The position numbers and the translations under genes are program-made. 41,160 bases of DNA from Octopus bimaculoides (taxonomy: Eukaryota), in contig NC_068987.1 of assembly GCF_001194135.2 (NCBI RefSeq), positions 54,169,266-54,210,425 of the forward strand. Direction: 5' to 3'. A model generated the notes under the pieces. The model did no database searches, was not told the DNA's origin, and saw only the letters and a list, made by a program, of their open reading frames with translations. Shown in pieces: positions 990-40,115 of this stretch; the first letter of the stretch is position 1, and each line of letters opens with the position of its first letter.

Positions 990-990
990 G
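922..990. repeat. (TA)n-(TG)n microsatellite
   Basis: Direct observation. Confidence 0.97.
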
Positions 991-1361
991 TTGACAAATA
1001 TATTTTACGATTCCGTACTGTTACTGTTTATCTCTCGCTCAGAGATTTAATATAACTTATCTCTCTCGTTACGAGATCAGCGACAGTGTGACGCTTGAAA
1101 AAGGATATAATATCTTGCGAGTAGAATGAGTTCTTTATCCCTAGACAGTGATTAACACACACTGAAGACGGGTAACCACCCAGAAACCCGGGTCTCTGTG
1201 TATCACGTAAGGCTAGAGATGGGAGCGATGACCTTCCTAGCAAATACTAATCGGGCGGGCAGATTGTGTCGCTGGCCAGCCGGAGGAGATGTCTTCCTGG
1301 GGCTAAAAACAACAGTAACACCGTCCTCTATAGTACCACCGCATTTAGTTGACAAATATAT
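990..1361 (+). mobile_element. Hammerhead-ribozyme-containing non-autonomous unit (retrozyme-like or solo Penelope pLTR) bounded by a 14-bp direct repeat
   Basis: GTTGACAAATATAT occurs at 990-1003 and 1348-1361. Nested complementary blocks: 1019-1028/1311-1320, 1078-1085/1267-1274 and 1134-1161/1195-1223. Confidence 0.65.
1148..1206 (+). ncRNA. Type I hammerhead ribozyme motif (minimal core, palindromic stem III)
   Basis: CTGAAGA 1162-1168; stem II CGGGT-AACC-ACCCA 1169-1182 (one C-A mismatch); GAA-ACCCGGGT-C 1183-1194 with a GUC cleavage triplet. Stem I pairs ACACACA with TCTGTGT (one mismatch) and extends by GTGAT/ATCAC past a TA bulge. Confidence 0.8.
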
Positions 1362-1668
1362 ATGTGTATATATAAAGAATGATGAGGTATTAAAGTAGAG
1401 AACTCAGTACTGGATTTAGATGTCCACAAAATCAGTAGAAGACTCATATCGCCGCACACACCTCACCAATGATCAAGTGAAAAAACCAAGTATGCGCTGG
1501 GTGTGGTAGCTAGATGGAGAGAGAATTATATCACCACTGGATTAGTATTTTATTTACTAAACCAGAAAGAATAAATGCCAAGACTGACCNNNNNNNNNNC
1601 TAAGGGTCTGTACTAATATCGTTGCTTATTTTGTCCATCGATCTAAAGATTTACCACTTGACCACAAT

Positions 1669-2050
1669 TGTTGTTGGCACTCCGTCGCTTACGACGTCGA
1701 GGGTTCCAGTTGATCCGATCAACGGAACAGCCTGCTCGTGAAATTAACGTGCAAGTGGCTGAGCACTCCACAGACACGTGTACCCTTAACCTAGTTCTCG
1801 GGGAGATTCAGCGTGACACAGAGTGTGACAAAGCTGGCCCTTTGAATTACTGGCACAACAGAAATAGGAAGAGTGAGAGAAAGTTGTGGTGAAAGAGTAC
1901 AGCAGGGTTCACCACCATCCCCTGCTGCAGCCACGTGGATCTTCAGGTGTTTTCGCTCAATAAACACTCACAACGCCCTGTCTGGGAATGGAAACCGCGG
2001 TCCTATGACTGCGAGTCCGCTGCTCTAACTACTGGGCCATTGCGCCTCCA
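1669..2050 (-). mobile_element. Full-length tRNA-type SINE (family C) with 14-bp target-site duplication
   Basis: Head GGCGCAATGGCCCAGTAGTTAGAGCAGCGGACTCGCAGTC...GGTTTCCATTCCC is A/B-box-like; the tail ends in (CAA)n. TSD CACTTGACCACAAT at 1655-1668 and 2051-2064. Confidence 0.88.
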
Positions 2051-2713
2051 CACTTGACCACAATAAGAGATGCGTATTCCTCATTATAAAATTATATTTT
2101 ATTTTATTTCATTGTATCACTTTCAATTAGAATGAATTATATTGATGTTCTTAAATTGTCACCAGAATATCTCTAAAGAATAAGTTTACATTTTTATTGC
2201 TTACTTCAATATTTTTAATTACATTTTCACAATAAATGTAATTAAATTTTTTTCGTATGTCCAATAAAATATTATTTAATTGACTGTCTTATTAAATTAC
2301 ATTTATTTTAATCTGACTTTCATATGCATAAAAAGATACACTGCCTTTGGTCTACCCCAAAAGGAAATATGACAGTCTGCACGCGTTAGGTTAATATACT
2401 CGGTATCTGAACAGTCCCCTGGCCGTTTACAATTTTGACCTGATTCCCACAAACGATATTTATCTGTAGCATGATGTAGTGGATCGTACAATGGAGTTTT
2501 CAAGGCTTATTTCAGTCATGGTGGATACTGAATAAGCCAGCCTCTTAACACAAGATTGCTTCCAAATATCAATATTTACGATTACAACTAAGCAGCGGAA
2601 TATTACTTGGCCTTTCGTGATTTGAGGACTCAATAACGATTGGTCAGCCATGTTGAAAGTAAGATAAATAGCATATGAGACTTCCACGCCTTTCTCAATG
2701 GTATTATCCGGTT

Positions 2714-4074: not shown

Positions 4075-4581
4075 AATATTCTTTTATTCTTTTATCTGTT
4101 TCAGTCATTTGACTGCAGTCATGCTGGAGCACCGCCTTTAGTCGAACAAATCGACTCTAGGACTTATTCTTTGTAAGCTTGGTACTTATTCCATCGGTCT
4201 CTTTTGCCGAACCGCTAGGTTACGGGAACGTAAACACACCAACATCGGTTGTCAATCGATGGTGGGAGAATAAACACATTCGCACAAATACATACATATA
4301 TATATATATTAAAAACTTAGGGAATAATAAGTATTCCAGGTTATCAGGACATTTGCTACTTTACACTTTACTAATGCAATGTAAACAGTATCATTTACAA
4401 TATTATCACAAATTTGGGATTTTACCAATAGAACCACAACTCCTGTTTCAGGACAACCTTATTTTCTGGAATACACATAGAAAGTTATATTCAATATTGG
4501 GTATAACTTTCTATGCGTATTCCAGAAAATAAGCTTGTCCTGAAGCAGGAGTTGCAGTTCTATTGGTAAAATCCCAAATTT

Positions 4582-4623
<42 letters not shown>

Positions 4624-4802
4624 TATATATATATATATATATACACGACAGGTTTGTTTCACTTTCCGGTTACCAAATTTACTCACAAGGCTTTGGTCAG
4701 CCCCAGGCTATAGTAAAAAATACTTGCCCAAGGCACCACGCAGTGAGACTGAACTCGGAACCATGTGATTGGGAAGCAAGCTTCCGACCACACAGCCACG
4801 CC
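4075..4802 (-). mobile_element. SINE family A (head 4646-4802, tail 4075-4290) with an insertion in its central microsatellite
   Basis: Head GGCGTGGCTGTGTGG..GAAGCTTGCTTCCCAATCACATGGTTCCGAGTTCAGTC. The tail matches 7550-7662, 9928-9981 and the reverse complement of 36480-36548. Confidence 0.85.
4401..4590. repeat. Near-perfect ~190-bp palindrome (foldback)
   Basis: Arm 4408-4489 is the reverse complement of arm 4502-4583 with a few mismatches, centred on AATATT 4493-4498. The ORF track shows near-identical peptides on both strands. Confidence 0.95.
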
Positions 4803-11868: not shown

Positions 11869-12397
11869 ATGTTTCTTTATTAGCCACACAGGGCTGAACA
11901 CACAGGGGACAAATTACAATGAAGAGCTTTTCTTTTTGGGTAGAAAAAAAAAGGCGGGGTAGGTTTTCGATCAAAAGGGATTAAAAAACACGATCAATAG
12001 GGATCGTGTATCACAGAAATATCATGATGTAAAATGTAAAGGAGGAAACAGATAAGGTTTATCCGTGGAAAGAAAAGCCTACGGAAAAGGCCATGGTAAC
12101 CTCGGTCAATAATGTCACATGTTAGCACATTTATTTGCAAGTAAGTAACTCTCTGTTTTAAATTTTCCGGGTTCATAGGATCATGTTCAAGGTAGCTTCC
12201 TCATTCATGCGTGCCATCCTTGCTATATTCACTCATCTTTTTTTGAAACATTCACTAGACAAAACTTGCCTCTCTACTCTCACTTTCCTTTTCAAGTGAT
12301 ACTTGAAAAAGTTGATGAGAGATTGACCAGAGAGGAAAGTGTCTGTCTCTAAACCTTTCAGACGCGTCCACCAGATACATTATTTTGCCATAGCCAC
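11869..12397 (-). mobile_element. 5'-truncated Tx1-like LINE inserted in (GATA)n
   Basis: 12250-12397 aligns with the ORF2 end of 27960-28085 (TTTCAAGTGA.ACTTGAAAAA, CGTCCACCAGATA). The 3' end reads AATAAAGAAACAT then (ATCT)n. (GATA)n lies at 11814-11868 and 12398-12463. Confidence 0.78.
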
Positions 12398-16544: not shown

Positions 16545-16763
16545 TACCTGTTTTCCCTCGAAGCAAACAGGCGAAAAAGGCTGTGTGGTAGACGAGGCTG
16601 AAGGGATTCAGGGTGGTCACCTCCCGTTTCGATCAAACCCTCATCGACTTTTTCTTGTTTCACTTAGAAAGGAAAGTGGTAGTGGACAGGGAAGTGCTCT
16701 GCCTCAGTGAACTTGTCAAAAAGGAGGTTTGATAGTGATGAAAACAGGGTTGGGTGAATGGAC
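16545..16763 (+). mobile_element. Tx1-like ORF2 C-terminal fragment
   Basis: Reads AKKAVW*TRLKGFR...LIDFFLFHLERKVVVDREVL, matching AKEVIWWTRLKG...FIDFF of 27960-28478. It is followed by (TCTR)n. Confidence 0.7.
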
Positions 16764-17832: not shown

Positions 17833-17990
17833 TGATTGTGGGGTAAGAAGATTGTAACCCGACCACATGATTCCGGTTTCAATATCACTACGTGGCATCT
17901 TGGGCAGGTGTCTTCTACCGTAGCCTCGGGTTGACCAAAGCCGTGTAAGTAGATTTGGTAGACAGAAACTGAAAGAAACACGTCATATGT
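17833..17990 (+). mobile_element. SINE family A head/body, followed by (TG)n and a gap
   Basis: GGTAAGAAG...ACCACATGATTCCGGTTTCA...GGCATCTTGGGCAGGTGTCTTCTAC...GATTTGGTAGACAGAAACTGAAAGAA. Confidence 0.82.
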
Positions 17991-18996: not shown

Positions 18997-19084
18997 TATC
19001 TTCATCATCACCGAGGATATGCAAGAGAGATGGACAAAATAGTTCATCCAACATTATCAACATTATCAACATTATCGTTGGGCT

Positions 19085-20105
19085 TTCTATAGAGTTTGTA
19101 AATATTCTTATTCAAATCTAAAGATACATCTAGGAAACTGACAATAGATACCAACCTGACGGTTGTCAATTTCCTAAATTATCTTTAGATTTAAATAAGA
19201 ATATTTACAAACCCTATAGAAATCCCAACGATAGATTTAGCTATATTAATGTAGGTTCCTGCCATCCCACCATAGTGTTTAAGAATTTAGATAAAAACAT
19301 TAGCAAGAGAATTTCTAACCTCTCCTCCGATATAAACATTTTTAACAGTGTTGCCCCAATGTATAATAAATCTCTAAAAGATAGTTGCTTTAGCGAGAAA
19401 ATAACCTCTACACCTGCTATTAGTCCAGAAATAAAGAAAGGGAAAAATAGGAATAGGAAAATTATGTAGTTCACACCACCTTACTCCCCCGAAGTGACCT
19501 TTAATATAGGTAGATATTTCTTATCACTTATAGATAGGCATATTCCAATCAATCATAATTATAGGAAGCTCTTTAATAGGCATAACCTAAAAATTAGTTT
19601 TAGTTCTACTACTAACTTTAAAAATATAATTGCACACAACACGCAAAACAACAAAATGAAACCAGCTGTTCCTGCAGAGTTAAAAGCTTGTGCCCGCTAA
19701 ATGGTGCTTGTATGATCGAGGCCATCAGTTTTGAAGCCACCGTAGACTCTACAACCTCTAAGGACATAGTTTCGTCAAAGAAATATATGTGTCTCACAGA
19801 GGTAAATTTTAAAACCAGGTTCAACAATCACACCTTAAGATTCAGACACTGGGATAAAAGGAAAGCAGCCAAATTATGCAGTTATATATGGTCCTTAAAA
19901 GAAAAGGTGTCAGTTATAAGATTCACTGGAAGATCTTGGCCAAGTGTAAGCCTTACACCAACGGCAGTAGAAAGTGTGGTCTTTGCGATATGGAAATATG
20001 GTGCTTCTGGAAAAGTTCTTTAAAACCCGCTACATGTCTAAATTCAAGAACTGAACTTTTTGTGTCATGTCCACATATGACAAAACATTTGTTACATTTT
20101 TGGAC
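19085..20105 (+). mobile_element. Penelope-like element relic: RT thumb plus C-terminal GIY-YIG endonuclease
   Basis: TNLTVVNFL, YKPYRNPND, SCHP, FTPPYS...IGRYFLSLIDRH, CPLNGAC, KYMCLTEVNFKTRFNNH, YIWSLK, CGLC, LNSRTEL..CPH; several frameshifts and stops. Confidence 0.92.
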
Positions 20106-21464
20106 CTCACAAGATCACAGATAGAACCTGGTTTTTATATTATGTCCACGTACAAGCCTTTCATATGTCATAACATTTCTTATATATTTCTTATATATAT
20201 TTTATGGCTTTATATATTTTTTTCTGTATATTATCTTTCACCCTTTATAATTTTGTAACTATATATGCGTGTAGTATATATCAAGTGTGTATTGCGTACA
20301 TATATACATGTGTACGAATGATTGTATATATATGAGTGCAAGACTCTATCTGTTGTACTTGTCTCCTTCCTTCATACATATATGTATGTATATACGTTTA
20401 TATATCTGCAGGTGTAGATGTGTTTGACAGACAGGAGGGTGCATTTGTGTACATACATATATAACTCATTTGTATATTCAAGTTCTGCGGCGAATGTGAA
20501 TGTTTTATGGTTTATGTTTTTACGTGTATTTTTATTTGTATATACGTCTATCCGCGTATGTATGTGCCTGTACGTATAGAGATGTGTATATCAACATAAT
20601 GATGCGTACATGGGTATATATACGTGTGTATGTGCGTGTATGCGTGTATTGTATGTATGTTTACATATGTATAGACATATATATGTGTGTGTATGTGTGT
20701 GTTCCTATATATATATATATATATATATATNNNNNNNNNNNNNNNNNNNNNNNNNNNNNNNNNNNNNNNNNNNNNNNNNNNNNNNNNNNNNNNNNNNNNN
20801 NNNNNNNNNNNNNNNNNNNNNNNNNNNNNNNNNNNNNNNNNNNNNNNNNNNNNNNNNNNNNNNNNNNNNNNNNNNNNNNNNNNNNNNNNNNNNNNNNNNN
20901 NNNNNNNNNNNNNNNNNNNNNNNNNNNNNNNNNNNNNNNNNNNNNNNNNNNNNNNNNNNNNNNNNNNNNNNNNNNNNNNNNNNNNNNNNNNNNNNNNNNN
21001 NNNNNNNNNNNNNNNNNNNNNNNNNNNNNNNNNNNNNNNNNNNNNNNNNNNNNNNNNNNNNNNNNNNNNNNNNNNNNNNNNNNNNNNNNNNNNNNNNNNN
21101 NNNNNNNNNNNNNNNNNNNNNNNNNNNNNNNNNNNNNNNNNNNNNNNNNNNNNNNNNNNNNNNNNNNNNNNNNNNNNNNNNNNNNNNNNNNNNNNNNNNN
21201 NNNNNNNNNNNNNNNNNNNNNNNNNNNNNNNNNNNNNNNNNNNNNNNNNNNNNNNNNNNNNNNNNNNNNNNNNNNNNNNNNNNNNNNNNNNNNNNNNNNN
21301 NNNNNNNNNNNNNNNNNNNNNNNNNNNNNNNNNNNNNNNNNNNNNNNNNNNNNNNNNNNNNNNNNNNNNNNNNNNNNNNNNNNNNNNNNNNNNNNNNNNN
21401 NNNNNNNNNNNNNNNNNNNNNNNNNNNNNNNNNNNNNNNNNNNNNNNNNNNNNNNNNNNNGAAT

Positions 21465-21815
21465 ATATTGTCATCTAAATTACGCAAAATGAAAATAATA
21501 CTGACATCTCATTTTAACAGATATATTTACCAAAATTACATAACAATATCTTGAAACACTAAAGAGTAAATCTATTTAATAAAATCGCCATTGGCTTCAA
21601 CCATGGCCTCCAAACTACTTCAGAATCTCCTGCAACTCTTCTGAACAGAATAATCAAGGGGGTTGCAGTCTGGTGGGGTTAGGTGGCCTGGTGTTAGGGG
21701 TGATGCTGTCGCAGAAATTGTCTGGCAGCCATGACTCGGTTCACCTGCTTGTGTGCCATGGTGCAGAGTCCTGTTGAAGGTTGGCTTTCTGTTTTCGGAT
21801 GTCCTGGAGCCATAC
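21465..21815 (-). mobile_element. Tc1/mariner-superfamily transposase C-terminal relic and end
   Basis: Minus strand QQDSAPWHTSR*TESWL...PPNP/PDCNPLDY...LEAMVEANGDFIK*. Confidence 0.75.
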
Positions 21816-22290
21816 TTAGTGCATGTTGTTAATACGTCCAGGAATGCTAGTTGATTGTCTTTTTTCCTTTTCCATTATGAGCTGTATGGATGACTTTATT
21901 GAGTTCACATGATCTAACAGTACTTGGACATCTTCCTGGTGGGGCCAGAGTGTAAAGGTGTCATCTACATATCGCAGCCATAGGGTTGGTTTTAGTGGTG
22001 TTGAATCTAAAGCCAAATTCTCAAAGTATTCCACGAATATATTGGCTATTATCGGTGATAATGGCGAACCCATAGCTAAACCCTCTTCCTATTCATACAT
22101 ATCAGTGTCCATTCTGAAGTAGGTAGTTTCTAGACAGAAGGTCAACATTTCCATCACTTGTTCAATTCCCCAGTGCTAGGAGAAACTCTGTATCTCTGAC
22201 AAAAGTGTGTTGAGGCAATGAAAGACCTCTCAATACAATTGTGTCAAGGATACAACACACTTGTATGTTTACGTCGTATCTCGATCCACT
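21816..22290 (-). mobile_element. Penelope-type reverse transcriptase fragment, a different lineage from 19085
   Basis: GLAMGSPLSPIIANIFVEYFE...WLRYVDDTF...HVNSIKSSIQLIMEKE. Confidence 0.92.
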
Positions 22291-27571: not shown

Positions 27572-28378
27572 TTTTTTTTTATTTGCCACCAGAGCGAAGG
27601 ATGAAGGGACAATACAAAGACAGACATAAAGTGTGGAGGTCTACATATAATGGAATGATAAAATAAAAAGTATACACGGTATACATAAGAAGAAGGGAAA
27701 TATACATAGTATATGACACTAGAAAAGGAGGGGAAAAGGGTCGTGATGGGATCCCCTTGATTCAGGAAGACCTCTCGGGATAATCAAGGAACCCCACCCT
27801 CCAAGGTCACCCTGAGTACCAAGGATGAGAGCCCATTCCAACTTCTTTCTTCCGACTCACAGGTCTATACTGAGAGTGGTACTATCCACACTTGCCATTT
27901 TCACAACTTTCAAGTACCTTTTCATAAATTCACTCGAGAACAGCACCTCCCTCTCAACCCTAACTTTTCTTTTCAAGTGAAACTTGAAAAAAATCGATGA
28001 AGGCTTTACCAAAGAGGAAAGTTTCTGTCCTCATTCCTTTCAGCCTCGTCCACCAGATAACCTCTTTCGCCACAGCCACCAGACAAAGGAAAACTACCTT
28101 GCCAGCCCGATTTAAGGAGGGCGGCAGGGCAATCATCATTATGAACTCGGACAACAGACGAATCTGTCCTACACGCAACAATAGTTGTTCGACATAACTC
28201 CACAAGTCAACAATGCCTGGACACTGAACGAGTGCATGTTGAACGGTTTCGTCGCTCTGCAAGCACTTCGGACAAGCTCGTCTGACAGCACATCCGTGTC
28301 TGTAGAGTTTATCTCGAACCGGTAGCGCCTCCACCCCGGTAGCACTGCCAGGCCAAAGACATCTGGAAATTATCCATA
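27572..28378 (-). mobile_element. Tx1-like LINE copy A, 5'-truncated
   Basis: LPVRDKLYRHG...CPKCLQSDETVQHALVQCP (C-terminal CCHC)...AKEVIWWTRLKG; 3' UTR; AATAAA plus an A/ATC/ATT tail at 27533-27583. Confidence 0.9.
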
Positions 28379-28639
28379 AAATAGTAATAATAATAATAAT
28401 ACTTTCCTTATTGGTCATAACCACCGAACACAAAACATAATGGACAATGCACAGACAAGGGACAGTTAGGTTATACATTTAAACAGCAAAACACAATTAG
28501 CAAAGAAAATTACAAAACAATATATAATTCCCCAATACGTGGGAGATCTACCGAGAGGTGACCAAAGAAACCTCACTCACTTTGGGCCCCTGACACCAAG
28601 GCACCTCAGGTAGACAACCCTCTCCTCTTCACTCCATGC

Positions 28640-31177
28640 GGCCTGAAGGCGCACACCTAGAGTAGGCTCATTCACACGGGCCATCCATGCTACATTCACC
28701 CACCTTTTGACAGCACCTCCCTCTCCAGTCTCACCTTCCTTTTCAGGTTGAACCTGAAAAAGTCAATGAGGCATCGGCCAAAGACGAAGGTACCCGTCTT
28801 CAACCTTTTCAATAGCGTCCACCTCTTTCGTTATAGCCACCACACAGAGAAAAACTGCCTTTCCTTCCCGGCCAAAGGAAGGAGGTGGGGCAATCTTCAC
28901 GATGGACTCGGACGAAAGCTGGATCCGTCCTACATGCAACAATAACTCTTCAACAAAGCTCCACTAATCAGCAATGAGCGGACTCTGTACTAGTATATGC
29001 AGAATGGTTTCCTCGCTCCCCGTACACCTTGGACAAGACCGTCTGACTGCATATTACGAACCGGCAGCGCGCCCCGGTAGCACTACCAGGCCAGAGACCT
29101 CTGGAAATTATCCATAGGCCCCGGCCAGAAAGTCTTCCAGAAGAGATCAGCCAGTTGATCCCTTTCAACGCCCAGAGTCTCTCCGAGATCGTCGTCACTC
29201 TTGCCCTCCACTAATCCCCAATAGAACTCCAAGGTGGAACTTCCACCGACCACATTGCTCGACTGGCCGAGGACTGTGAGTACTTGGAGACACTCTAGGT
29301 ACCAAGCGCCCTGTCTCGGTCTATGCCTGATCCAGGACTTTAGCTCCGTCAAGGAGACGAGCTGCGGAAAAGCGTGTCTAACAAACGGCGAACAGACCTG
29401 CTCGCCGTTAAGGTGTCGCTGGAAATATTGCAGCCTCAGCACATATCTGCGCATCATGAACCATGGCATGTCCAGTCCTCAACGCAACGGGTGCTGACAA
29501 GCGGTACCGTCTGATAAGCGGTACCCTTCCCTTTCACAAGAAGCAGAGGAGCAAGCGCACCAGCCAGTATAGGCACGAAGTGGGGCAAGGATGACAGTCA
29601 GGCTGTAGTATATGACTGATGCGATGTACGTATTCGTCACCTCCACCTAACCTTTCAGAGACAGCTTTCTCTCGGCCCATTTCTGGGTGAGACTGGCCAC
29701 CCTGTTTGTCACCTCACCCCAGTTCTTGTCCACTTGGAGGTCCGGGCCAAACCAGACCACGAACAACTTAACCAGTCCCTCCATCCAGCGCCCCACAACG
29801 CTGTCGGTCGGCATGGATCTGCCTCTCCAGGTGCCGGGCTGCAAGCCCACTGATTTCTCCTGGTTAATCATTGCTCCCGTCACCACTTTGTATTCCCTTA
29901 CGGTAGTGCCGAGCATCTCTATTTCAGAAACATCTGACACTATCATGTTGACATCGTCCGCGTACGCTGTCACACCTCTTCCACATCCTAGCTCACGCGG
30001 AATGCTCCTAGAAACATCCAGCTTCCGCAGTAATGGCGCGAGTGCCAGTGTGTAGAGAAGGGGTGAGAGTGGCATCCTTGACGGACCGAACGGGTGATGC
30101 TAAATGATTCCGACAAGTGACCATTTACTTTGACCACCGAACAGATGTCGCTGTACATGGCAGTGATCCAGCCTCTGAAACAGGACCGAAGCCAGCCGCC
30201 AGAAGGACAGCCTCCAAGTACCGATAGTCGACCCTATCGAAGGCTTTCTACTGATCCAAATTGATCAGGGCCCCACCCATGCCAGGTTCTTTACAAACTC
30301 TCTCTATGATGTACCGCGTGAAGTGGAGGTTGTTGTGGATAGATCTGTTGAGGATAGCACAAGTCTGCGCATCACCCACCTGGCCACGACAAGCGTCAAC
30401 CTCTTTGCTAATACCTTGGCCAAAATTTTGTAATCTGCATTTAGCAGAGTTACAGGCCTAAAGTTATCAAAATGTCCCCCTTGTTCGGATCCTTTCTCAG
30501 TAGCGTCACAACACATCGGCTCACAGATCTGAGGATTCTCCCGTTCTGCTGCTAATTGCGATAGACATCTACCAAAATCTCACCGAACAAGTCTGGCATA
30601 TGAATATAAAGTTCGAAGGGCAGACCACCCAATCCCGTGCAACTGTCCAGTGCGTCACGTATATCTTTCGCTGTTATCGGCATTTCGCAGAACTCCACGT
30701 CCCTGGCCGAAAGCCGCAGTAATCCATCGAGGTAGGAGGTGAAGTTCACCTCCGCCTCCGAACCATCATGTGCCTCAAGAGACCCCCAAGAAAGACCTCC
30801 AAACGTCTAAAGAAATCCGGCTGTCCCGTTCCGGTCGGTGCGTGCACAGCGAACAGTCTAAAAGCACAACCTTCGTAATCATTTACGTCCAGGACCACCA
30901 TCCTACCTTCCTAATCCAGGAAGACCGACTGTATCTCGAGATCCAGACCTTTTCTGAACAACACCGCGACTCCACCTCCCATTCTCGGTCGACCAAGAGA
31001 TGCAAAGAAATCATAATCATCGAAAATAGGCTCTAAGGTGCGCATGTCCGAGATCCTGGTCTCGCTGACAGCTATTACGTCTAATTTTCGCAGCCTGAGG
31101 TCATTGAGCAGGCGACCTTGCTTCCATGACGGTCCCAGGCCGCGTACATTCATACTGCTCACTCTAAGCAATGCCAT
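28640..31177 (-). pseudogene. Tx1 ORF2 remnant: APE endonuclease, reverse transcriptase, C-terminal zinc finger
   Basis: SMNVRGL...DVIAVSETR (APE), FRPVTLLNADYKILAKVLAKRL, SVRQG/PLSPLLY, AYADD. Many frameshifts, and at ~2.5 kb it is shorter than a complete ORF2. Confidence 0.93.
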
Positions 31178-31219
31178 GTTGGACGATGGGAATGTGTGAA
31201 AATAGGAGAGAGCTACTTA

Positions 31220-35949: not shown

Positions 35950-37210
35950 TTGACCAAAAACAAAATGAAATAACTGGTGTAGTCATAACACAAATGCCTA
36001 ACAGATATTCTACGTGCGTAGAACTGATAGCAGGATATTGGTACAAGAATTTCGCCTTCTATCATCAAGATTTGATCACATTGTGTGAAAAGTGTATGGG
36101 AATAGTTTAAGCCTGCGTAAATGGCTGTCAACTGCCTTGATTTTTCTTATTTCAAAAATTTCGCCAAACAACACAAAACTAAAGTTACAATCCAATAACC
36201 AGCCGCAACATAATATATAAAATATACGTTAGGTATTTAGTTATGTTCTTATAAAATTATTATACGATAGGTGTGGCTATCTGGTAAGAAGCTTGCTTCC
36301 TAACCACATGGTTCCGGGTTTAGTTCCACTGCGTGGCACCTTAGACAATTGTCTTCTACTATAGCCTTGGGCAGACTAAAGCATTGTGAGTGGATTTGGT
36401 AGGCGGGAGCTGAAAGAGGACCGTCGTGTGTGTCTCTGTGTGTGTGTGGGGGGGGGGANNNNNNNNNNGGGGGGGGGGGGGGATCTGTGTTTTTACCTCA
36501 CCATCGTTTGACAGCCGATGTTGGTATCTTTACCTCTCCGTAACTTAATTCGAAATATATGTTATAATCTCAACTATTTTAAAATTCTCATTCCCTTGTT
36601 GTCGAGGTTTTTCTTTAAAAAGGAGTATTTCCTTGTGGATCACAGATAAGACCTTTGCTAAAAATTGTGTTAATCTCGTTAGAATTGTAATTAAAACTTC
36701 ATTTCTTCCATAACCAATATAAGTAGAAAAATTCTTTCCAGTAGGAACACACGAAACCCTTCTCTTCTTCATAACTACAATAACCTTAATATTTCCCATC
36801 CCAGTGGTATATGTCTTTCTAAAACATAAGTTTATCAAGTTAATATTTCTGTTGTTGATAACAATGAAGCAAAAAGCTACATAGGGCTTGCTAAAAATCT
36901 TTTTAACAATGTAGGAATATATTCTCGTAACACATGTATACATTCAGATTAGAAAAGCATCATACCACAGTATTATACACATATATCTGGGATTTAAAAG
37001 ATAATAATATTAACATTAAAATTATAAAATCAATCAGCCTACTATAGAACATCTCGCTACGTTGATTACACACCAGCAGAAGGTATCCTTACATTAGCTG
37101 ATGGATAAAATTATATAATATCCTTTTGGAATGTTATACAAATGTTTCAAAATTGATGAATTCTTGTTGATATTTTTATCGCTATTCATAAAGAAATTTC
37201 TGATAAAAAT
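35950..37210 (+). mobile_element. Highly degenerate Penelope-like element (RT remnant plus GIY-YIG), interrupted by a SINE
   Basis: Plus frame SGICLSKT*VYQVNISVVDNNEAKSYIGLAKN (36800-36900) and YIWDLKDNNINIKI (~37000) match the 19085 element. A weaker RT-like CVELIAGY lies near 36015. Confidence 0.68.
36270..36548 (+). mobile_element. SINE family A (head, TG/poly-G linker with gap, truncated tail)
   Basis: GTGGCTATCTGGTAAGAAGCTTGCTTCCTAACCACATGGTTCCGGGTT... and tail CCATCGTTTGACAGCCGATGTTGGT...CCGTAACTTA. Confidence 0.85.
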
Positions 37211-38734: not shown

Positions 38735-40115
38735 GTACGCTAGGGTTGTCTCAAAAGAAACTCAACTTATAAACTTTTAAAGCGGTGCCCCAACCAACCA
38801 ACCGTTGCACCGTGCTCGCTACGACAGCGCTACGCATGGCTGACTTTGATCTTTATGTCTAATAATAATCAAACTACGCCATCTCTGTAAGTGATCGATA
38901 TTCACGTGTTAGAATAAACGAATATTTATTTCTCATGACAATTTGTCACAAGTAAAACAATAAAGCTAAAAGAAAGGTAACATGTTTGTGAGAAATTCTA
39001 CTTCAAAATAGGAAAAACTTTTACAGAGACTTATCTCTAATGCTGCAACTGACCCATGGGGAAGATTCGTCGGAACTGACACCAGCATATCAAATCATGA
39101 AGAGCAATCCTCGAAGATGATCCCAAATATAGATAGCATTCCACAGCAACGGACAACGAACACGTCACTAATGTGGTTGCTAGGTTCTTTGGTAATTGTT
39201 GTCTGGGTGTCCGTGAGGTTTCTGGAGAAGTAGGCATCCATAAAAAATCGTACAACACAATATATTTTAAAAACTGTAATTTGTGCTTCGTTTGCTGGCG
39301 AATGAACAAAGGGGAAACTGAGCTACTGTCTGTAAGGAGCTGTTTGATCGCTCGAATGGTGATTCGCACAAACCGGCAAGTCACAATCTGTGAGCCTTTT
39401 TTCACAACAGGATTATGGTCACAGTGCTTTTCAGAAGATACTGGAAGACTTTAGGTGGTGAAAAATGTGAGTATCTTTGCAGTTGACACCCGATTTGAAG
39501 GAGAGAAGAGTAGAAGTTGGCTCTGAACTACTCTGAAGTAACTGAAACCAATGAAGACTCTTTTTCCCATCTTATGGCAGAGGATGAAACGTGGGTGTAT
39601 CATTATGATCTGGAAACGAAGGTTCAGTCCATGAGATGGCGTCACGCCTCTCTTCCAGAGCCTAAAATGTTCAAAAGCCCGCTTTCGGCGCTGAAAGTCA
39701 TAGTACCTATTTTGTATGGTGGGGGTGACAAGGACGTCGTCTTCCTTGCTTTTCTGGAACGTGCCTGCACTCTGAACAGCGAGTAGTACATTGAGACACT
39801 CAAAAATATTATAGAAGCCATTCTAAGGAAGAGACAGAAAAAAAGTAAACAATTCACATTCATCATGATAATGTGCGATCCACATATCTTTGGCAACGAA
39901 TTAAACCCTCCGACTTTCACTTTTTCGGTCCAATGAAGAAAAGTATTTAAGGATAACCATATGATGACATGGATGTGATGAAGCTAGCTGTGAAGAAGGG
40001 GTGCAACAATTCTCAACTGATTTTTTCTTCAATGAGGCTCTAAGAGCGGGGTTCAATGTTGGCGCAAATGCCTCTCTTGTGATGAAATCTTTGGTAGTTA
40101 TGTTGTATAGAGGAA
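38735..40115 (+). mobile_element. Degenerate mariner transposon
   Basis: DETWVYHYD.ETK.QSM.W, HDNV, PSDFHFFGPMK, terminal GSYVV*. Left end TACGCTAGGGTTGTCTCAAAAG; the right TIR is not evident. Confidence 0.88.

What the first reader, a model, noticed from the sequence alone, without database searches (positions are those of the whole stretch)
990..1361. Retrozyme-like unit: ~350-nt rod-shaped element carrying a hammerhead ribozyme
Seen: a complete hammerhead core (CUGAAGA, stem II, GAAA, GUC; predicted cleavage after 1194) with palindromic stem III ACCCGGGU and a bulged, extended stem I. The flanks pair in nested order (1019-1028 with 1311-1320, 1078-1085 with 1267-1274, 1134-1161 with 1195-1223), so the whole unit folds as a rod. 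An exact 14-bp direct repeat bounds it (period 358 bp). Known: minimal type I hammerheads with palindromic stem III occur in Penelope pLTRs and in non-LTR retrozymes, 150-400-nt units that yield circular RNAs and can cleave as dimers. Inference: this is a cephalopod retrozyme monomer or solo pLTR, possibly mobilised by Penelope elements like those in this window. The C1169-A1182 mismatch looks like CpG decay of a C-G pair, so this copy may be impaired while other copies are active. I cannot tell whether the family is already catalogued.
Basis: partly seen in the sequence, partly recalled or inferred. Interest (0 to 1): 0.88.

Follow-up and report, generated by a model that had tools for sequence, protein, structure and literature searches.

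The report
Solo hammerhead-carrying short retroelement insertion
A 344-base mobile-element insertion carries a sequence with every conserved base of a hammerhead self-cleaving RNA. It looks like a lone, probably disabled copy of an already known kind of animal "retrozyme"/Penelope-related element, and no second copy could be found to prove it.

Summary
The hammerhead core is complete: CUGAAGA 1162-1168, GAAA 1183-1186, GUC ending at 1194. Helix III is the palindrome ACCCGGGU. Helix I is bulged and extended. The three nested complementary stretches and the exact 14-bp direct repeat (990-1003 / 1348-1361) are also there.

A strict version of the motif occurred 0 times in 40 Mb of simulated sequence, so it is unlikely to be chance in this window.

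Three points do not hold up:
- The "rod" fold is no more stable than shuffled sequence (z -0.9 linear, -0.65 circular).
- No Rfam hammerhead model matches, even at E<=10 on 91 bases.
- The 10.1/11.1 pair, normally G-C, is a C.A mismatch, and helix I has a C.C mismatch.

The unit is single-copy in the window and solo, not tandem. It has no similarity to the Penelope-like ORF fragments 18-20 kb away. No relative turned up in any collection I could reach, so covariation, copy number and the Penelope link remain untested.

Best reading (about 0.55): a solo monomer of a short hammerhead-bearing non-autonomous retroelement. With only one cleavage site, it cannot release a circle on its own. This is a new member of a known kind, of modest interest.

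The parts
990..1003 (.). Left copy of the exact 14-bp direct repeat GTTGACAAATATAT. Most likely a target-site duplication. The alternative is the terminal redundancy of a slightly more-than-unit-length copy.
   Evidence: (D2), sequence
1004..1347 (+). Body of the inserted unit: 344 bp, 45.6% GC, CpG o/e 1.0. It sits between a (GT)n run and an AT/GT-rich microsatellite. It has no poly(A) or simple-repeat tail and no tRNA/5S-like head.
1019..1028 (+). 5' arm of a 10-bp perfect inverted repeat (partner 1311-1320). It forms the outermost helix of the predicted fold.
   Evidence: (I15)
1148..1206 (+). Type I hammerhead-like motif including proximal and distal helix I
1162..1168 (+). Core box CUGAAGA (C3-A9)
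1169..1182 (+). Helix II with loop 2: C1169.A1182 mismatch at positions 10.1/11.1, three G-C pairs, loop UAACCA
1183..1186 (+). Core box GAAA (G12 A13 A14 A15.1)
1186..1193 (+). Helix III, the palindrome ACCCGGGU. In cis it gives 2 bp plus a CCGG tetraloop. Between two copies it gives an 8-bp intermolecular helix.
   Evidence: (I5)
1194..1195 (+). Predicted self-cleavage site: after C17 = C1194, before U1195
   Evidence: inferred from the hammerhead numbering applied
1311..1320 (+). 3' arm of the 10-bp inverted repeat
   Evidence: I15
1348..1361 (.). Right copy of the 14-bp direct repeat
   Evidence: (D2)

Best explanation
Positions 1004-1347 are a single (solo) insertion of a short non-autonomous retroelement. 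It carries a type I hammerhead motif of the animal kind, with a short palindromic helix III. That places it with the non-LTR retrozymes and the Penelope-like-element end sequences.

Inferred life cycle of the family, none of it shown here:
1. Head-to-tail copies are transcribed.
2. Two hammerheads pair through the ACCCGGGU palindrome and cleave after GUC.
3. The unit-length RNA is ligated into a circle by a host tRNA ligase.
4. A reverse transcriptase/endonuclease supplied in trans, most plausibly from a Penelope-like element, copies it into a nicked target. Here the target was a GT/AT microsatellite, and the insertion left a 14-bp duplication.

This particular copy has only one cleavage site, so it cannot release a unit-length RNA. 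Mismatches next to the core (C.A at 10.1/11.1, C.C at 1.2/2.2) make it probably a poor ribozyme. It is best seen as a dead-end offspring copy.

Shown: the motif, the direct repeat, solo status in the window, and the ordinary fold. Inferred: family membership, cleavage, circle formation and the mobilising enzyme.
For: - All conserved core positions and three helices are in the right order.
- The strict motif occurred 0 times in 40 Mb of simulated sequence and once in the window.
- The helix sizes match the published description of canonical metazoan type I hammerheads, with a palindromic loop 3 and action as dimers (PMC4209133).
- A mismatch at the base of helix II is described for the axolotl Amex2 retrozyme hammerhead, which cleaves better as a dimer (PMC7229834).
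- Two copies cofold to -51.7 kcal/mol, against 2 x -20.7 for monomers, using the intermolecular palindrome helix.
- The unit is 344-358 bp at 45.6% GC. Mussel retrozymes are about 350-390 bp and animal retrozymes have low GC.
- An exact 14-bp direct repeat brackets the unit. Animal retrozymes, when they show target duplications, have ones longer than 4 bp.
- Solo monomers are a recognised class, dispersed along chromosomes (bioRxiv 10.64898/2026.07.22.740005).
- There is no tRNA/5S head and no poly(A) or simple-repeat tail.
- The insertion lies in a microsatellite, as reported for Penelope-like elements (PMC8557442).
- Penelope-like ORF remnants occur in the same window.
Against: - No Rfam hammerhead covariance model matches at the gathering score, or at E<=10 on 601 or 91 bases.
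- The G10.1-C11.1 pair, described as highly conserved, is replaced by C.A, and helix I has a C.C mismatch at its second pair.
- The hammerhead fold is 9 kcal/mol worse than the monomer MFE.
- The whole unit is no more structured than shuffles.
- There is no second copy in 41 kb and no tandem arrangement.
- It has no similarity to the Penelope-like fragments in the window.
- No relative was found by pattern scans of the metagenome, viral and prokaryotic genome collections.
- No relative was found by translated search of the protein collection.
- So multi-copy status and covariation, the usual proofs, are missing.
Confidence: 0.55

Rival explanations
1. The unit is the truncated end of an autonomous Penelope-like element. 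It would be a piece of pseudo-LTR/untranslated region containing that element's own hammerhead, inserted by target-primed reverse transcription that stopped early. On this reading it is not a separate non-autonomous family.
For: - Hammerheads sit in the flanking repeats of Penelope-like elements, and most genomic motifs occur as single, probably truncated copies (PMC4209133).
- Retrozymes and pseudo-LTRs are sequence-related in Xenopus.
- Penelope-like ORF remnants are present in the window.
- A contig encoding a relative of those ORFs (L001) has a hammerhead-like motif 265 nt after its stop codon, again with a mismatch at the base of helix II.
- The insertion is in a microsatellite.
Against: - The unit has no recognisable Penelope coding sequence or similarity to the window's fragments.
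- The motif has the canonical sizes (helix I 6-7, helix II 4). It does not have the long helix II (6-8 bp) and short helix I described for Penelope minimal hammerheads.
- The window's Penelope-like copies lack their 5' parts and ends, so they cannot be compared.
Confidence: 0.2
2. The hammerhead is a chance look-alike inside an unrelated short insertion or ordinary non-coding DNA. It has no ribozyme ancestry and no cleavage.
For: - The Rfam hammerhead models do not match.
- There are two mismatches next to the core, including the normally conserved 10.1/11.1 pair.
- The loose descriptor hits 12% of simulated windows.
- The same core-plus-helix-III string occurs by chance in a conserved bacterial coding gene in metagenomes.
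- The finding was selected from a scan of many windows, so rare chance motifs are enriched.
- No family could be demonstrated.
Against: - The strict descriptor gave 0 hits in 40 Mb simulated, which is less than about 0.003 per window.
- Features not needed for a chance core match are present together: a palindromic helix III, a 5'-strand bulge followed by a 5-bp distal helix I, and a 6-nt loop 2.
- The motif lies inside a unit bounded by an exact 14-bp repeat, of the size typical for hammerhead-bearing repeats.
Confidence: 0.2
3. The unit is a SINE-like element mobilised by a LINE, not by a Penelope-like element, that happens to carry a hammerhead, as Schistosoma Sm-alpha does.
For: - A neighbouring 382-bp insert (1669-2050) that looks tRNA-derived by eye also has a 14-bp target duplication. 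The resident LINE machinery therefore makes duplications of exactly this length.
- A LINE with RVT_1 and zf-RVT domains is in the window.
Against: - There is no tRNA/5S/7SL-like head.
- The unit has no poly(A) or simple-repeat tail, whereas the neighbouring insert ends in CAACAACAA.
- Its 3' end has no similarity to the LINE copies in the window.
Confidence: 0.1

Closest known systems
Metazoan non-LTR retrozymes (Cervera & de la Pena 2020, PMC7229834), e.g. the Mytilus galloprovincialis repeats of about 350-390 bp
   Same: Type I hammerhead with a short palindromic helix III. Unit of about 350 bp, GC below 50%, and no LTR/PBS/PPT. When a target duplication is present it is longer than 4 bp. 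Same phylum, if the window is from a cephalopod.
   Different: This is a solo copy, whereas tandem dimers to multimers define the family. Its predicted fold is not unusually stable. The 10.1/11.1 position is mismatched. Expression and circles are unknown, and no other family members were seen.
Hammerheads in the pseudo-LTRs of Penelope-like elements (Cervera & de la Pena 2014, PMC4209133)
   Same: Palindromic 15.2-16.2/loop 3, expected action as a dimer, mostly dispersed single motifs, and association with genomes rich in Penelope-like elements.
   Different: Penelope minimal hammerheads have a long helix II (6-8 bp), a short helix I (4-5 bp), an extra unpaired base after A9 and a conserved G10.1-C11.1. 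Here helix II has 4 positions, helix I is 6-7 plus a distal stem, and 10.1/11.1 is C.A. No Penelope ORF adjoins the unit.
Axolotl HHR_Amex2 / newt satellite 2 hammerheads
   Same: Helix III of two base pairs with a tetraloop, a mismatch at the base of helix II, poor activity as a monomer and better as a dimer, and a repeat unit of 330-350 bp.
   Different: Those sit in very large tandem arrays with demonstrated linear and circular RNAs. Here there is a single copy with no expression data, in a different phylum.
Schistosoma Sm-alpha, a SINE-like repeat with a type I hammerhead (Ferbeyre et al. 1998, cited in PMC4209133; details from my own knowledge)
   Same: A short (about 335 nt) non-autonomous repeat carrying a type I hammerhead, with a bulge in the 5' strand of helix I and a 6-nt loop 2.
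   Different: Sm-alpha hammerheads have G10.1-C11.1 and are recognised by the Rfam Hammerhead_1 model. This motif is not.

Membership tests
Hammerhead ribozyme, type I | Conserved core: C3 U4 G5 A6 N7 G8 A9, G12 A13 A14, A15.1-U16.1, and C17 (not G) before the cleavage site | tested here: met
   CUGAAGA 1162-1168, GAAA 1183-1186, U1193, C1194
Hammerhead ribozyme, type I | Three helices around the core, with helix I open-ended | tested here: met
   Helix I has 6 of 7 pairs plus a 5-bp distal stem. Helix II has 3 G-C pairs. Helix III has 2 bp plus a tetraloop. The hammerhead fold is 9 kcal/mol above the monomer MFE.
Hammerhead ribozyme, type I | G10.1-C11.1 pair at the base of helix II (highly conserved) | tested here: not met
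   C1169.A1182 mismatch. The conservation is stated in PMC4209133.
Hammerhead ribozyme, type I | Match to the curated covariance models (Rfam Hammerhead_1 and relatives) | tested here: not met
   No hammerhead family at the gathering score on the window, nor at E<=10 on 900-1500 or 1135-1225
Hammerhead ribozyme, type I | Compensatory changes in the helices across related copies | not testable with these tools
   No other copy in the window or in any searchable collection
Hammerhead ribozyme, type I | Site-specific self-cleavage | not testable with these tools
   Needs in vitro transcription
Non-LTR retrozyme | Head-to-tail tandem repeats (dimer or more), each with a hammerhead | tested here: not met
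   One unit only. The only repeat is the 14-bp terminal direct repeat. Solo monomers are nevertheless recognised as derivatives.
Non-LTR retrozyme | Unit of about 170-400 bp, GC below 50%, no LTR/PBS/PPT | tested here: met
   344 bp body or 358 bp period, 45.6% GC
Non-LTR retrozyme | Multi-copy family in the genome | not testable with these tools
   The source genome is not searchable. There is a single copy in 41 kb.
Non-LTR retrozyme | Expressed as unit-length linear and circular RNA | not testable with these tools
   No transcript data
Penelope-like element pseudo-LTR | Flanks, or is contiguous with, a reverse transcriptase plus GIY-YIG endonuclease ORF | tested here: not met
   The nearest Penelope-like ORF pieces are at 19134-20121 and 21623-22088. 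There is no similarity between them and the unit.
Penelope-like element pseudo-LTR | Minimal hammerhead architecture: helix II 6-8 bp, helix I 4-5 bp, and an unpaired base between A9 and G10.1 | tested here: inconclusive
   The helix sizes are the canonical ones. C1169 can be read as the unpaired base with G1170-C1181 as 10.1-11.1, but A1182 then intrudes before G12.
LINE-dependent SINE | Pol III head derived from tRNA/5S/7SL, and a poly(A), simple-repeat or LINE-like 3' tail | tested here: not met
   No such Rfam match at E<=10, no ARAGORN hit, the 3' end reads ...CCGCATTTA, and there is no match to the window's LINE copies

The most novel reading that the evidence does not exclude
The unit is a recent, unit-length offspring of a live cephalopod retrozyme family. 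In that family the hammerhead natively lacks the G10.1-C11.1 pair, so standard Rfam-based annotation misses it. The clean 14-bp duplication in a microsatellite would then record how a reverse transcriptase/endonuclease integrates a single round of a circular RNA template. That would give a direct handle on the still unproven mobilisation step of animal retrozymes.
Probability: 0.2. Interest if true: 0.5.

Novelty: new member of a known kind. Interest (0 to 1): 0.3.

Why it matters
Hammerhead-bearing repeats and their link to Penelope-like elements are established in cnidarians, bivalves, insects and lower vertebrates. In the library I could search, no paper describes retrozymes in cephalopods. 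The only mention is 235 Rfam Hammerhead_1 hits in the giant squid genome (PMC6962438).

If a family stands behind this copy, three things would follow:
- The known range of retrozymes would extend to cephalopods.
- It would show that covariance-model annotation misses variants.
- It would offer a solo insertion with sharp ends for studying integration.

This single copy, as it stands, is an ordinary dead transposon relic.

Tried and rejected
1. Rfam on the whole window at gathering score, and on 900-1500 and 1135-1225 at E<=10. No hammerhead family matched; the only hits were microsatellite-driven miRNA matches.
2. blastn of 990-1361 against the window with word size 7. No second copy.
3. A relaxed listing of every YTGANRA...GAAA combination in the window. 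Only the motif at 1162 is foldable.
4. Exact-pattern scans with CTGANGANGGGN6CCCNGAAACCCGGGTC of the metagenome, viral and prokaryotic genome collections. 0 hits.
5. The broader pattern CTGANGAN{8,20}GAAACCCGGGTC. It gave 4 viral and 120+ metagenome loci. On inspection none had convincing helices I and II together, and the top scorers were copies of one bacterial coding gene.
6. A 'protein trick': the translated frame of the whole unit searched against 5.8 billion predicted proteins, to catch ORFs called on other copies. No hit. Exact look-ups of window ORFs found nothing on record.
7. Reaching related genomes through the Penelope-like ORF. This gave 2 distant hits on short ENA contigs.
8. Reaching related genomes through the LINE reverse transcriptase. 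This gave 35 hits. One NCBI contig is 75% identical in DNA. One named hit is from Acanthosepion pharaonis. One 708-kb ENA contig was also sampled. None contains the unit.
9. The rod hypothesis, rejected by shuffles for both linear and circular folds.
10. The tRNA-SINE hypothesis, rejected.
11. Pfam did not confirm the GIY-YIG part of the Penelope-like fragment. Only RVT_1 was confirmed for 21819-22088, so the 'Penelope-like' label rests partly on my reading of motifs.

Full report
**What is there.**
- Reading 800-1600 confirms the motif letter by letter.
  - The core boxes are CUGAAGA at 1162-1168 and GAAA at 1183-1186.
  - The 8-nt palindrome ACCCGGGU lies at 1186-1193 and C1194 follows it. 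By the standard hammerhead numbering this puts the scissile bond between 1194 and 1195.
  - Helix II is three G-C pairs (1170-1172 with 1179-1181) closed by the loop UAACCA, with a C1169.A1182 mismatch at its base.
  - Helix I reads A1161-U1195, C1160xC1196, five pairs 1155-1159/1197-1201, a two-base bulge (U1153 A1154), and five more pairs 1148-1152/1202-1206.
1019-1028/1311-1320 is 10/10. 1078-1085/1267-1274 is 8/8.
- The exact 14-bp direct repeat GTTGACAAATATAT at 990-1003 and 1348-1361 is also real.
- The body between the repeats is 344 bp with 45.6% GC. It lies between a long (GT)n run and an AT/GT-rich microsatellite.

**Is it more than chance?**
- A loose hammerhead descriptor finds one motif in the window. 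It finds 0.16 per simulated window, so 12% of windows have at least one. On its own that is weak.
- A descriptor that asks for what is actually seen gave 0 hits in 40 Mb of first-order Markov sequence scanned on both strands. It required three of four helix II pairs, a short palindromic helix III and six of seven helix I pairs. Without the palindrome requirement there were 3 hits.
- That bounds the chance expectation below about 0.003 per window. Over a genome of gigabases some chance hits are still expected, and this window was picked by a scan.
- Only four non-low-complexity 14-mers in the window recur exactly at 100-600 bp spacing. One pair brackets this motif.
- I therefore take both the motif and the insertion boundaries as real features.

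**What fails.**
- The rod fold is not supported.
  - The linear MFE (-93.7 kcal/mol) is within one standard deviation of dinucleotide shuffles (z -0.76 and -0.92). The circular fold gives z -0.65.
  - The predicted structure is branched, with 6-8 hairpins, and 55-57% paired.
- In the ribozyme region the monomer MFE (-20.7) is not the hammerhead. Enforcing the hammerhead pairs costs 9 kcal/mol.
- Two copies together are predicted to gain about 10 kcal/mol by pairing their palindromes. That fits the dimer mode but proves nothing.
- No Rfam hammerhead model matches, either at the gathering score or at E<=10 on only 91 bases.
- The 10.1/11.1 pair, described as highly conserved G-C (PMC4209133), is a C.A mismatch here.

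**Context in the window.**
- The unit is unique in the window. It has no tRNA or other small-RNA head and no poly(A) or simple-repeat tail.
- Just downstream, a second exact 14-bp repeat (1655-1668/2051-2064) brackets a 382-bp insert.
  - By eye this insert has a tRNA-like head on the minus strand and a CAACAACAA tail. Neither ARAGORN nor Rfam confirms the head.
  - So 14-bp duplications are produced by retroposition in this genome. The hammerhead unit lacks that insert's tail type.
- Penelope-like ORF remnants exist at 19134-20121 (+) and 21623-22088 (-).
  - Pfam confirms RVT_1 only for the latter and does not confirm the endonuclease part.
  - They are fragments that end in microsatellite or assembly gaps. 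They carry no hammerhead and no similarity to the unit.
  - Because their 5' parts are missing, the absence of a hammerhead in them is uninformative.
- A degenerate LINE (RVT_1, zf-RVT) lies at about 27960-31216 (-).

**Search for relatives.**
- Pattern scans of the metagenome, viral and prokaryotic collections found nothing specific.
- A broader pattern returned only chance matches, including a conserved bacterial coding gene.
- A translated search meant to catch ORFs called on other copies found nothing.
- Proteins related to the window's transposon ORFs led to a few contigs. One is 75% identical in DNA to the window's LINE. One named hit comes from the cuttlefish Acanthosepion pharaonis. 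None contains the unit.
- One of these contigs, L001, encodes a relative of the Penelope-like ORF. It has a hammerhead-like motif 265 nt after the stop codon, with a U.U mismatch at the base of helix II. This is a weak hint that such variants travel with this lineage of elements.
- Copy number, covariation and the link to Penelope-like elements are therefore untested, not refuted.

**Comparison with what is known.**
- The published description of canonical metazoan type I hammerheads fits this motif. It specifies helix I of about 6 bp, helix II of 4 bp, and helix III of 1-2 bp capped by a 2-4 nt palindromic loop, with activity as dimers in tandem repeats.
- The description of Penelope 'minimal' hammerheads fits less well. 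Those have a long helix II, a short helix I and an unpaired base after A9.
- Animal non-LTR retrozymes are tandem repeats of about 170-400 bp with low GC. Mussel units are about 350-390 bp. Target duplications, when present, exceed 4 bp.
- Axolotl Amex2 hammerheads have a two-pair helix III, a mismatch at the base of helix II, and cleave mainly as dimers.
- Solo monomers are recognised as dispersed, probably non-transposing offspring. Retrozymes are related to Penelope pseudo-LTRs in Xenopus.
- Penelope-like elements prefer microsatellite targets. In vitro, hammerhead cleavage is not needed for their integration (PMC11167929).
- On the defining tests:
  - The core and helices are met.
  - G10.1-C11.1 and the Rfam models are not met.
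  - Tandem organisation is not met at this locus.
  - Multi-copy status, covariation, cleavage and circles could not be tested.

**The A1182 question.**
- But the element keeps 18 CpGs, with o/e 1.0 and TpG/CpA o/e 0.84, in a window whose o/e is 0.76. There is no sign of general CpG decay in the element.
- A T-to-C change at 1169 would explain the mismatch equally well. The mismatch could also be native to the family, as in Amex2.
- The perfect 14-bp repeat and the intact CpGs suggest a fairly recent insertion.

**Repeat: duplication or redundancy?**
- The 14-mer could be host sequence duplicated on insertion. It could instead be the overlap of a 1.04-unit copy of a 358-nt circular template.
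- Removing either the 358 bp or the 372 bp leaves a natural-looking GT/AT microsatellite junction. The two readings cannot be separated without an empty site.

**Verdict.**
The retrozyme-like interpretation is reasonable but only partly supported.
- Most likely this is a solo, probably inactive copy of a hammerhead-bearing short retroelement of the retrozyme/Penelope lineage (about 0.55).
- The rivals are a truncated Penelope end (about 0.2), a chance look-alike (about 0.2) and a LINE-driven SINE (about 0.1).
- It is a new member of a known kind, of modest interest unless a live family stands behind it.

Noticed in passing
window 1655-2064: A second exact 14-bp direct repeat (CACTTGACCACAAT, 1655-1668 and 2051-2064) brackets a 382-bp insert. 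On the minus strand the insert starts with a tRNA-like head (by eye only; ARAGORN and Rfam are negative) and ends in CAACAACAA. A related fragment lies at 500-611 in the opposite orientation (78% identity).
   Followed up: partly
window 19073-20121 and 21623-22088: Penelope-like ORF remnants: reverse-transcriptase thumb plus a Cys-rich/GIY-YIG-like end on the + strand, and the RT core with RYVDD on the - strand. They face each other across an assembly gap. A 162-bp palindrome at 19073-19233 marks the 5' truncation point. Pfam confirms only RVT_1 for 21819-22088.
   Followed up: partly
window 27940-31216 (-), with fragments at 12241-12397, 16570-16744 and 28710-29116: A degenerate LINE with frameshifts (RVT_1, zf-RVT) and several copies of its 3' end. 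A 722-bp NCBI contig (GCA_024449705.1) is 75% identical to it in DNA. The nearest named protein is from the cuttlefish Acanthosepion pharaonis.
   Followed up: partly
window 39454-39983: Remnant of a mariner-type transposase (weak Pfam Transposase_1 match).
   Followed up: no
window 4401-4590: A 190-bp near-perfect palindrome (91.6% self-complementary).
   Followed up: no
window 4643-4802, 17837-17979, 36270-36429: Three copies (76-78% identical) of a short dispersed repeat, each next to a microsatellite. Several other small repeat families also occur. About 9% of the window is N gaps, and microsatellites are very abundant.
   Followed up: no
L001 1413-1452 (ENA contig ERZ1740060 NODE_43301): A contig encoding a 37%-identical relative of the window's Penelope-like ORF has a hammerhead-like motif 265 nt after the stop codon. 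The motif has CUGAAGA, helix II with a U.U mismatch at its base, GAAA, a 3-bp helix III, GUU and a 6-bp helix I. A (TA)n run follows about 30 nt later. Rfam does not match it at E<=1.
   Followed up: partly
metagenome loci L019, L020, L032, L038, L047, L057 and others: The string CTGAAGA-N17-GAAACCCGGGTC recurs in a conserved bacterial protein-coding gene, with variation at wobble positions. This is a chance hammerhead-like string and a caution about pattern-only detection.
   Followed up: partly
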